Shown here piece by piece: positions 49,724 through 50,156 of a stretch of DNA of 64,000 nucleotides. Source of the DNA: Octopus sinensis (taxonomy: Eukaryota); NCBI RefSeq assembly GCF_006345805.1, contig NC_043011.1, positions 47,566,464 through 47,630,463 of the forward strand, given 5' to 3'. Made by a program: the position numbers and the translations under genes. The notes under the pieces were generated by a model. It saw only the letters and a program-made list of their open reading frames with translations, did not search any database and was not told the origin of the DNA. Position 1 is the stretch's first letter. Every line of letters begins with the position of its first letter.

Positions 49724-50150
49724 TATAAGCGAGAAAGAAGCAACAAGAATGGATAGGTTTTTAGTACAATCGTTTCATACAAGGACAGGCTTTATTAAAA
49801 GTTGCAAAAATTACAGCATATAAACGTGTCCCGTACTCATCAGCTAAAATACATGTGAGTTCTCTAGACATCCTAGTGGTTGAGGCTATACTCATGAAGT
49901 GATGTAGATAATTAAGTAACATAAACAGATTTCCAAAGTTCATTTGGAAATCTGTTTATGTTACTTAATTATCTACATCACTTCATGAGTATAGCCTCAA
50001 CCACTAGGATGTCTAGAGAACTCACATGTATTTTAGCTGATGAGTACGGGACACGTTTATATGCTGTAATTTTTGCAACTTTTAATAAAGCCTGTCCTTG
50101 TATGAAACGATTGTACTAAAAACCTATCCATTCTTGTTGCTTCTTTCTCG

Positions 50151-50156
<6 letters not shown>
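49724..50156. repeat. Perfect inverted repeat: 214-bp arms with a 5-nt loop
   Basis: 49724-49937 is the exact reverse complement of 49943-50156 by manual comparison; the loop is gttca (49938-49942). Confidence 0.97.

What the first reader, a model, noticed from the sequence alone, without database searches (positions are those of the whole stretch)
49724..50156. Perfect 433-bp palindrome (214-bp arms, 5-nt loop) in otherwise unique sequence
Seen: the two arms are exact reverse complements with no mismatch found by eye, separated by gttca. The right arm ends in a (TA)n tract, and the left arm starts at a lone TATA about 110 bp from another (TA)n block. The arm sequence matches no other repeat in the window and has no ORF. 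Known: long perfect palindromes extrude cruciforms and are normally unstable, and long hairpin RNAs are Dicer (hp-siRNA) and ADAR substrates, with A-to-I editing pervasive in coleoids. Inference, four options: (a) a very recent fold-back inverted duplication resolved at TATA/(TA)n microhomology; (b) a fully palindromic foldback MITE with TA ends; (c) a hairpin-RNA locus kept homogeneous by arm-to-arm conversion; (d) an assembly artefact from a hairpin read.
Basis: partly seen in the sequence, partly recalled or inferred. Interest (0 to 1): 0.8.

Follow-up and report, generated by a model that had tools for sequence, protein, structure and literature searches.

The report
Perfect 433-bp palindrome beside TA repeat
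A 214-base stretch of ordinary non-coding DNA is followed five bases later by its exact mirror copy, ending in a TA microsatellite; it is most likely a very young fold-back copying accident at a fragile repeat, with no sign of function, and reads or other genomes are still needed to rule out a mobile element or an assembly error.

Summary
Arms 49724-49937 and 49943-50156 are 214/214 complementary around the loop GTTCA. The next-longest perfect short-spacer stem of non-simple sequence in the 64 kb is 17 nt.

The arm is unique in the window, has no internal repeats and no credible protein or RNA homologue. The palindrome breaks exactly at a TATA that merges into a (TA)21 tract on the right.

My best reading (about 0.5) is a very recent local fold-back ("snap-back") inverted duplication. 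A break at or near the fragile (TA)n tract would have been followed by self-primed copying of one arm and rejoining through 4-nt TATA microhomology.

Rivals:
- A young palindromic Tc1/mariner-type MITE with a TA target duplication, about 0.2. Copy number could not be tested.
- An assembly or read artefact, about 0.15. Known long-read fold-back artefacts do not return to unique downstream DNA after 214 nt.
- A maintained hairpin-RNA locus, about 0.05. A mollusc small-RNA survey found no dedicated endo-siRNA pathway.

No public collection reachable here holds this genome, so reads, copy number, orthologous sites and the organism itself remain untested. This is a curiosity of a known kind, with modest interest.

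The parts
49724..49937 (.). Left arm of the palindrome (214 nt, 34% GC, complex unique sequence)
   Evidence: exact reverse complement of 49943-50156. No other copy in the window. No internal direct or inverted repeats.
49938..49942 (.). Central 5-nt spacer GTTCA (hairpin loop / fold-back point)
   Evidence: It is too short to hold any sequencing adapter. Loops under 9 nt are the class attacked by the Mre11 complex in yeast (PMC8053094).
49943..50156 (.). Right arm of the palindrome (214 nt)
49724..49727 (.). TATA at the outer end of the left arm: either the partner of the 4-nt junction microhomology or a TA/TATA target-site duplication
   Evidence: Symmetry fails one base further out, at 49723 T versus 50157 T.
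50153..50195 (.). (TA)21.5 microsatellite. Its first 4 nt are the last 4 nt of the right arm. Proposed break and rejoining site.
   Evidence: TRF: period 2, 21.5 copies, 95% matches.
49613..49723 (.). 111 bp of unique sequence between the left microsatellite and the left arm
   Evidence: unique in the window.
49311..49612 (.). Complex TA/TG/TACA microsatellite block left of the locus
   Evidence: TRF: period 2, 150 copies, 75% matches.

Best explanation
This is a very young, local fold-back (snap-back) inverted duplication. It is a mutational scar, not a functional element.

Proposed sequence of events (inferred):
1. A break or collapsed replication fork arose at or next to the cruciform-prone (TA)n tract.
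2. After resection, the 3' single strand folded back on itself over a few complementary bases around what is now the GTTCA loop.
3. A polymerase extended it, copying the neighbouring 214 nt in inverted orientation.
4. The new strand came off and annealed through its terminal TATA to the (TA)n on the other side of the break, and was sealed.

The result is A-B-loop-B'-(TA)n-C.

In the simplest version the left arm is the original, and the ancestral allele read ...TTTCCAAAGTTCA followed directly by the (TA)n tract. The mirror version, with the right arm as the original, is equally possible.

What is shown: perfect arms, the 5-nt spacer, uniqueness in the window, symmetry ending exactly at a TATA shared with the (TA)n tract, and no transposon-like substructure.

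What is inferred: the break, the self-priming, which arm is the parent, and the youth of the event. Zero differences in 214 sites puts arm divergence below about 1.4% at 95%, whereas the interspersed repeats in the window are 6-25% diverged.
For: - Perfect 214-nt arms and a 5-nt loop.
- It is the only complex-sequence palindrome in 64 kb.
- The arm, the 111-bp left spacer and the right flank are all unique in the window. By contrast, SINE-like families recur many times at 75-94% identity.
- The arm has no internal repeats.
- The outer boundary coincides with a 4-nt TATA that runs into (TA)21, which is the typical size of an end-joining microhomology.

Literature:
- Fold-back priming at double-strand breaks near short inverted repeats gives inverted duplications through Pol delta synthesis (PMC10622511).
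- Templated inverted insertions arise at breaks by fold-back plus NHEJ or alt-EJ capture of the other end (PMC11724301).
- AT/TA repeats form cruciforms and cause breaks (PMC9890227 and PMC12972899 abstracts).
Against: - No read data, no second individual and no orthologous site could be examined. Neither the reality of the structure nor an 'empty' allele has been shown.
- The fold-back insertions documented in yeast are mostly 5-34 bp, so 214 nt is long for that class.
- The TATA at both ends is explained equally well by a TA target-site duplication of a transposon.
- A perfect palindrome with a 5-nt loop is expected to be unstable. Its presence therefore needs either extreme youth or some way of being maintained.
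Confidence: 0.5

Rival explanations
1. It is a young copy of a fully palindromic MITE of the Tc1/mariner kind: two long terminal inverted repeats around a 5-nt core, inserted into a TA at the left edge of the (TA)n tract. It would be comparable in design to human Made1 (two 37-bp TIRs around 6 bp), but about five times longer.
For: - TA (or TATA) lies directly outside or at both ends.
- It is small and non-coding with typical base composition, and its 'TIRs' are perfect.
- A degenerate mariner-type transposase HTH remnant lies 1 kb away (51118-51318, Pfam HTH_48, E = 0.081, below cut-off). This suggests TA-targeting transposons have lived in this genome.
- Made1 is a precedent for a MITE that consists of TIRs only (PMC1784062).
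Against: - There is no second copy or fragment in the other 63.5 kb, although other repeat families recur 5-20 times there. This excludes only extremely abundant families.
- There are no paired internal direct repeats, as long-TIR Tc1 elements carry, and no sub-repeats as in FB elements.
- The TA 'duplication' is uninformative. TA is self-complementary, so it cannot be told from the end of the palindrome, and it sits inside a TA repeat.
- Dispersed MITE copies normally show arm mismatches. 214/214 requires a very recent insertion from a perfectly symmetric master copy.
Confidence: 0.2
2. It is an assembly, gap-filling, polishing or library artefact. The real genome would hold one arm only, and the second arm comes from chimeric reads or from a local mis-reconstruction next to the hard-to-assemble microsatellite.
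For: - Perfect arm identity and a junction inside a microsatellite are what a software or library artefact would also give.
- Fold-back reads are a known long-read artefact, at about 0.55-0.6% of ONT genomic reads (PMC12338684).
- The window has no N over 64 kb despite dense microsatellites. This suggests a long-read assembly (inference).
Against: - Documented fold-back reads are symmetric about the read midpoint and run back over the same locus. They are a small minority of reads and nearly absent from HiFi data.
- Here the sequence leaves the copy after exactly 214 nt and continues into 13.8 kb of unique DNA. Two independent chimeric junctions 214 nt apart would have had to win the consensus.
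- There is no adapter or foreign sequence at the 5-nt centre.
- No other such structure exists in the window, so there is no systematic assembler habit.
Confidence: 0.15
3. It is a maintained hairpin-RNA locus. Transcription would give a 214-bp perfect dsRNA used by Dicer (hpRNA/endo-siRNA) or ADAR, and the arms would be kept identical by arm-to-arm conversion.
For: - If transcribed, the region would form a perfect hairpin.
- In E-value mode, Rfam models of long-hairpin miRNA precursors score on it, for example MIR841 at 111.9 bits.
- In Drosophila, young hpRNA loci arise by inverted duplication (PMC10317233).
Against: - All Rfam matches are far below gathering scores (111.9 against 200, and so on). 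They are centred on the loop on both strands, meaning they reward any perfect hairpin.
- hpRNA arms typically derive from a target gene. The arm's only ORF has no relative among 5.8 billion clusters. The 20 weak phmmer hits are an 18-aa motif summed over bacterial Ig-like repeats.
- Nothing shows transcription.
Confidence: 0.05

Closest known systems
Fold-back (inverted) duplications and templated inverted insertions formed at DNA breaks (fold-back priming; snap-back synthesis in SD-MMEJ / Pol theta end joining)
   Same: An inverted copy lies directly beside its template, with a minimal spacer at the fold point and short microhomology at the far junction. It also sits next to a structure-forming, break-prone repeat.
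   Different: Experimental interstitial events are mostly 5-34 bp. The large events create hairpin-capped or dicentric chromosomes and not a 214-nt interstitial insert. Here the event itself is inferred, not observed.
Made1-type palindromic MITEs (Tc1/mariner derivatives made of two TIRs and a few central bases)
   Same: A nearly or wholly palindromic small element, with a 5-6-nt core, TA at the ends and no coding capacity.
   Different: Made1 is 80 bp, has thousands of copies and has imperfect arms. Here the arms are 214 nt and perfect, only one copy is known, and copy number is untested.
Drosophila hpRNA loci
   Same: A long inverted repeat with a short loop that could arise by local inverted duplication.
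   Different: hpRNAs are defined by transcription, Dicer-2-dependent siRNAs and homology to targets. None of these is shown here, and the pathway was not found in molluscs.
Palindromic AT-rich repeats (PATRRs) and other fragile long palindromes (own knowledge; yeast work in PMC8053094)
   Same: A near-perfect palindrome several hundred bp long, with a tiny or absent spacer. It is predicted to extrude hairpins or cruciforms and be attacked by Mre11 and other nucleases.
   Different: The arms here are ordinary 34% GC complex sequence and not extremely AT-rich. Polymorphism and breakage have not been examined.
Fold-back artefacts in long reads
   Same: Near-perfect forward/reverse concatenation, often with under 11 nt between the halves.
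   Different: The artefacts are read-length, are symmetric about the read midpoint and do not rejoin downstream unique sequence.

Membership tests
Fold-back inverted duplication (break/replication repair product) | An inverted copy immediately adjacent to its template, with a short spacer at the fold point | tested here: met
   214-nt arms, 5-nt spacer, 100% complementary.
Fold-back inverted duplication (break/replication repair product) | Short microhomology or a blunt join at the second (outer) junction | tested here: met
   Symmetry ends exactly after a TATA that is shared with the adjoining (TA)21 tract. This is also compatible with a TA target duplication.
Fold-back inverted duplication (break/replication repair product) | An ancestral or allelic state that carries only one arm | not testable with these tools
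   No collection reachable here holds this genome or its relatives.
MITE (Tc1/mariner-type, palindromic) | Terminal inverted repeats, small size, no coding capacity | tested here: met
   Met trivially by any palindrome: 433 bp, with only a 60-aa orphan ORF.
MITE (Tc1/mariner-type, palindromic) | TA target-site duplication flanking the element | tested here: inconclusive
   TA/TATA is present at both ends. It is self-complementary, so it is part of the palindrome, and it lies within a (TA)n tract. No 8-bp (hAT), TTAA (piggyBac) or 3-bp (PIF) duplication fits (read).
MITE (Tc1/mariner-type, palindromic) | Multiple dispersed copies in the genome | not testable with these tools
   No other copy in the 64-kb window. 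The genome itself is not available. Arm 28- and 29-mers are absent from the metagenome and prokaryote collections, which is uninformative.
Long-TIR Tc1 (IR/DR) derivatives and FB elements | Paired direct repeats (transposase binding sites) or tandem sub-repeats inside each arm | tested here: not met
   No direct repeat of 10 nt or more (0 mismatches) up to 20 nt (5 mismatches or fewer) within the arm.
hpRNA / miRNA-like hairpin gene | Match to a described RNA family at its curated threshold | tested here: not met
   0 matches at gathering score. All E-value-mode hits are far below gathering.
hpRNA / miRNA-like hairpin gene | Arms homologous to a target gene | tested here: not met
   No relative of the arm ORF was found. 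The phmmer hits are a chance repeated motif. Only protein-level homology in one frame was tested, so UTR or non-coding targets are untested.
hpRNA / miRNA-like hairpin gene | Transcription and Dicer-dependent small RNAs | not testable with these tools
   No expression data here. Literature: no dedicated endo-siRNA pathway was seen in molluscs.
Long-read fold-back artefact | The palindrome spans the read, is symmetric about its midpoint, and does not return to downstream sequence | tested here: not met
   The arms are only 214 nt. Unique sequence continues for 49.7 kb on the left and 13.8 kb on the right. Criteria are from PMC12338684. Read support itself is not testable.

The most novel reading that the evidence does not exclude
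A hairpin-RNA locus caught at birth in a cephalopod. The fresh, still perfect inverted duplication would lie in a transcribed region and yield a 214-bp perfect dsRNA. That RNA would be hyper-edited by ADAR, or processed into small RNAs, in a lineage where no endo-siRNA pathway has been found. This would give a natural test substrate for how coleoids handle long self dsRNA.
Probability: 0.05. Interest if true: 0.65.

Novelty: new member of a known kind. Interest (0 to 1): 0.3.

Why it matters
If real, this is a clean natural example of a several-hundred-base perfect palindrome in an animal germline genome, with both junctions readable. Such structures are expected to be short-lived. One that is still perfect records the mutational mechanism: fold-back copying at a TA microsatellite with 4-nt microhomology. 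It also marks a site that is likely to be polymorphic and fragile. It would be a useful marker for studying palindrome birth and decay, and for checking how assemblers handle palindromes. It does not by itself bear on a long-standing question, and nothing points to a function.

Tried and rejected
1. Independent copies through the protein collection. Exact look-up of ten window ORFs, including the 60-aa ORF that crosses the loop and the ORFs that cross both outer junctions, found none on record. A homology search with the arm ORF found nothing. A control search with a SINE-derived ORF of the same window also found nothing. The collection therefore does not hold such ORFs of this genome, and the negatives say nothing about copy number.

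2. Exact 28- and 29-mers of the arm in metagenome contigs and in prokaryote genome contigs: 0 matches. This was expected and is uninformative.

3. phmmer of the arm ORF against 1.84 billion representatives. There were 20 hits at E of 1e-3 or less, the best at 9.6e-9. All are long bacterial Ig-like repeat proteins in which one 18-aa motif (about 10/18 identical) recurs 4-8 times, so the scores add up. I rejected these as chance.

4. Rfam. Nothing at gathering score. In E-value mode many long-hairpin miRNA models score on the centre, on both strands, well below their thresholds. I rejected these as structure-only matches.

5. Transposon substructure in the arm: none.

6. Pfam on 16 window ORFs. 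The only results were a sub-threshold mariner HTH remnant near the locus and a sub-threshold DUF3093 match (E = 0.045) in a low-complexity ORF.

7. Identification of the organism. There are no rRNA or tRNA genes and no named homologue, so the 'octopus' premise is unverified.

8. Parvovirus-like or telomere-like hairpin termini, and a retro-copy origin for the 540-bp block between the two microsatellites. I considered both from the sequence and dropped them. The hairpin is simple and not T/Y-shaped, and there is no poly(A) at a 3' end.

Full report
**Observation.** The arms 49724-49937 and 49943-50156 are 214 nt each and exactly reverse-complementary, with GTTCA (49938-49942) between them. Complementarity stops precisely at 49723 (T) and 50157 (T). 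As single-stranded DNA the region folds into one uninterrupted hairpin of -264 kcal/mol. One hundred dinucleotide-preserving shuffles give -38 +/- 5 (z = -46).

I scanned the whole window for perfect stems with spacers up to 30 nt. Apart from this palindrome, the longest stem in non-simple sequence is 17 nt (587-623). With mismatches allowed and spacers up to 60 nt, every other inverted repeat of 30 nt or more is microsatellite. The structure is therefore real in the sequence as given, and it is a singular outlier.

**Surroundings.**
- The last four bases of the right arm (TATA) are the first four of a (TA)21.5 tract at 50153-50195.
- On the left, a 300-bp complex TA/TG microsatellite ends at 49612. 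A further 111 bp of unique sequence (49613-49723) precede the arm, which begins TATAAGCGAG.
- The arm, the 111-bp spacer and the right flank up to about 50650 have no other copy in the window.
- SINE-like families recur many times in the window at 75-94% identity.
- The window is 35% GC, has no N, and is packed with microsatellites and short interspersed repeats. No ORF has a Pfam match above threshold, and there are no tRNA or Rfam genes.
- It looks like intergenic or intronic DNA of a repeat-rich animal genome. I could not verify that it is from an octopus.

**The arm itself.** The arm is 34% GC, like the window. It has no internal direct repeats (none from 10 nt exact to 20 nt with five mismatches) and no internal inverted repeats. 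It therefore lacks the paired binding-site repeats of long-TIR Tc1-type elements and the tandem sub-repeats of FB elements.

This is 60 aa on the minus strand (49761-49943), crossing the loop, with a 53-aa twin in the other arm. The ORF has no relative in the 5.8-billion-cluster collection. A full phmmer pass over 1.84 billion representatives gave 20 weak hits. All of them come from one 18-residue motif that recurs in bacterial Ig-like repeat proteins, so that the scores add up. I regard these as chance.

Rfam finds nothing at gathering score. In E-value mode several long-hairpin miRNA models score on the centre, on both strands and far below their thresholds, for example MIR841 at 111.9 against 200 bits. 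That is what any perfect hairpin would do.

**External evidence.** I tried to reach independent copies or independent assemblies of the locus.
- Exact look-ups of ten window ORFs, including ones that cross the loop and both outer junctions, found nothing.
- Arm 28- and 29-mers are absent from the metagenome and prokaryote contig collections.
- As a control I searched a SINE-derived ORF from the same window. It too found nothing.

The collections simply do not hold this genome's non-coding ORFs, so the negatives carry no information on copy number. Read support, genome-wide copy number and orthologous sites therefore remain untested.

**Age.** Zero differences in 214 paired sites puts the divergence between arms below about 1.4% at 95% (from exp(-214 d) = 0.05). 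The interspersed repeats in the window differ by 6-25%. Either the duplication is much younger than the window's other repeats, or the arms are being homogenised, or the structure is not biological.

Yeast work shows that hairpins with loops under 9 nt are the class attacked by the Mre11 complex, and that perfect and quasi-palindromes are fragile (PMC8053094). That favours youth over long maintenance.

**Most likely mechanism (confidence about 0.5).** I propose a local fold-back, or snap-back, inverted duplication.

AT/TA repeats form hairpins and cruciforms and provoke breaks (abstracts of PMC9890227 and PMC12972899). A break near short inverted repeats can fold back and prime Pol delta synthesis to give an inverted duplication (PMC10622511). 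[quoted passage not shown]

Applied here:
1. A break occurred at the edge of the (TA)n tract.
2. The 3' strand folded back around GTTCA.
3. It copied 214 nt.
4. It left the template where its end read TATA, annealed to the (TA)n on the other side, and was sealed.

The features shown in the sequence fit this: an adjacent inverted copy, a minimal loop, a unique template, and symmetry ending at a 4-nt microhomology with the microsatellite.

The break, the self-priming and the choice of parent arm are inferred. The mirror scenario, in which the right arm is ancestral and the copy ran four bases into the (TA)n, is equally possible. A weakness is size: the documented yeast insertions are mostly 5-34 bp.

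**Rival 1, MITE (about 0.2).** TA or TATA at both ends is what a Tc1/mariner insertion would leave. A degenerate mariner-type HTH lies 1 kb away (51118-51318, HTH_48, E = 0.081, below cut-off). Made1 shows that a MITE can consist of two TIRs and six central bases (PMC1784062).

Against this reading:
- TA is self-complementary and lies in a TA repeat, so the 'duplication' is uninformative.
- There is no transposon-like substructure in the arm.
- There is no second copy in the window. This excludes only extremely abundant families.
- Perfect arms require a very recent insertion from a perfectly symmetric master copy.

**Rival 2, artefact (about 0.15).** Long-read fold-back artefacts exist, at about 0.55-0.6% of ONT genomic reads and nearly none in HiFi data. 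They are symmetric about the read midpoint and map back over the same locus (PMC12338684).

Here the copy ends after 214 nt and unique DNA continues for 13.8 kb. An artefact would need two chimeric junctions 214 nt apart to win the consensus. There is no adapter at the centre, and no similar structure occurs elsewhere in the window. The outer junction does lie in a microsatellite, where assemblers and polishers err, so I keep a non-trivial probability.

**Rival 3, maintained hairpin-RNA locus (about 0.05).** Nothing supports it beyond the ability to fold. hpRNA arms normally derive from target genes (PMC10317233), and none was found. A survey of mollusc small RNAs that included O. bimaculoides found no dedicated endo-siRNA pathway (PMC12479628). 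If the locus happens to be transcribed, the dsRNA would be an obvious ADAR substrate. That would be a consequence, not evidence of function.

**Verdict.** The structure belongs to a known kind, a fold-back inverted duplication or palindrome, of which it would be an unusually clean and long interstitial example. Interest is modest (0.3). The decisive tests are read mapping, a genome-wide search with one arm, and comparison of orthologous or allelic sites. The three models predict different empty-site sequences, which are given under next steps.

Noticed in passing
window 40482-41095 and 45404-46163 (with inner pair 41676-41765 / 44644-44734): There are two tandem arrays of a roughly 190-bp SINE-like unit: 3 copies at 96-98% identity, and 3.8 copies. 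They lie in opposite orientation and match at about 89%, and a second inverted pair inside them matches at 92-94%. Together they form a roughly 5.7-kb inverted structure with about 2.9 kb between the inner arms. The unit also occurs singly elsewhere in the window, for example at 29373-29562 and 21743-21926. This could be an FB-like element with sub-repeated arms or an old inverted segmental duplication.
   Followed up: partly
window 51118-51318 (+): A 66-aa ORF resembles the N-terminal HTH of Mos1/mariner transposases (Pfam HTH_48, E = 0.081, 13.5 bits against a cut-off of 24.1). It is a degenerate remnant. It lies between two inverted copies of a tRNA-like SINE, 50659-50892 and 51711-51944, which are 87% complementary.
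   Followed up: partly
window 587-623: A perfect 17-nt stem with a 3-nt loop in complex sequence (AAGTGCAATCCATTATT...). It is the second-longest non-simple perfect hairpin in the window.
   Followed up: no
window 27292-28023 and 54066-54608: Two well-conserved minisatellites: a 98-bp unit (also scored at 291 and 389 bp) with 7.5 copies at 94% matches, and a 59-bp unit with 9.2 copies at 97%.
   Followed up: no
window 16000-18000: A strongly C-over-G skewed block (GC skew -0.61) made of CT-rich 38/86-bp tandem repeats at 16959-17273.
   Followed up: no
window 46357-46739 and 47964-48360: Two collinear inverted segments (89-91% complementary) about 1.2 kb apart, just upstream of the finding. 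Most likely they are two SINE copies head to head. The 48300-48393 segment has at least 15 relatives in the window.
   Followed up: no
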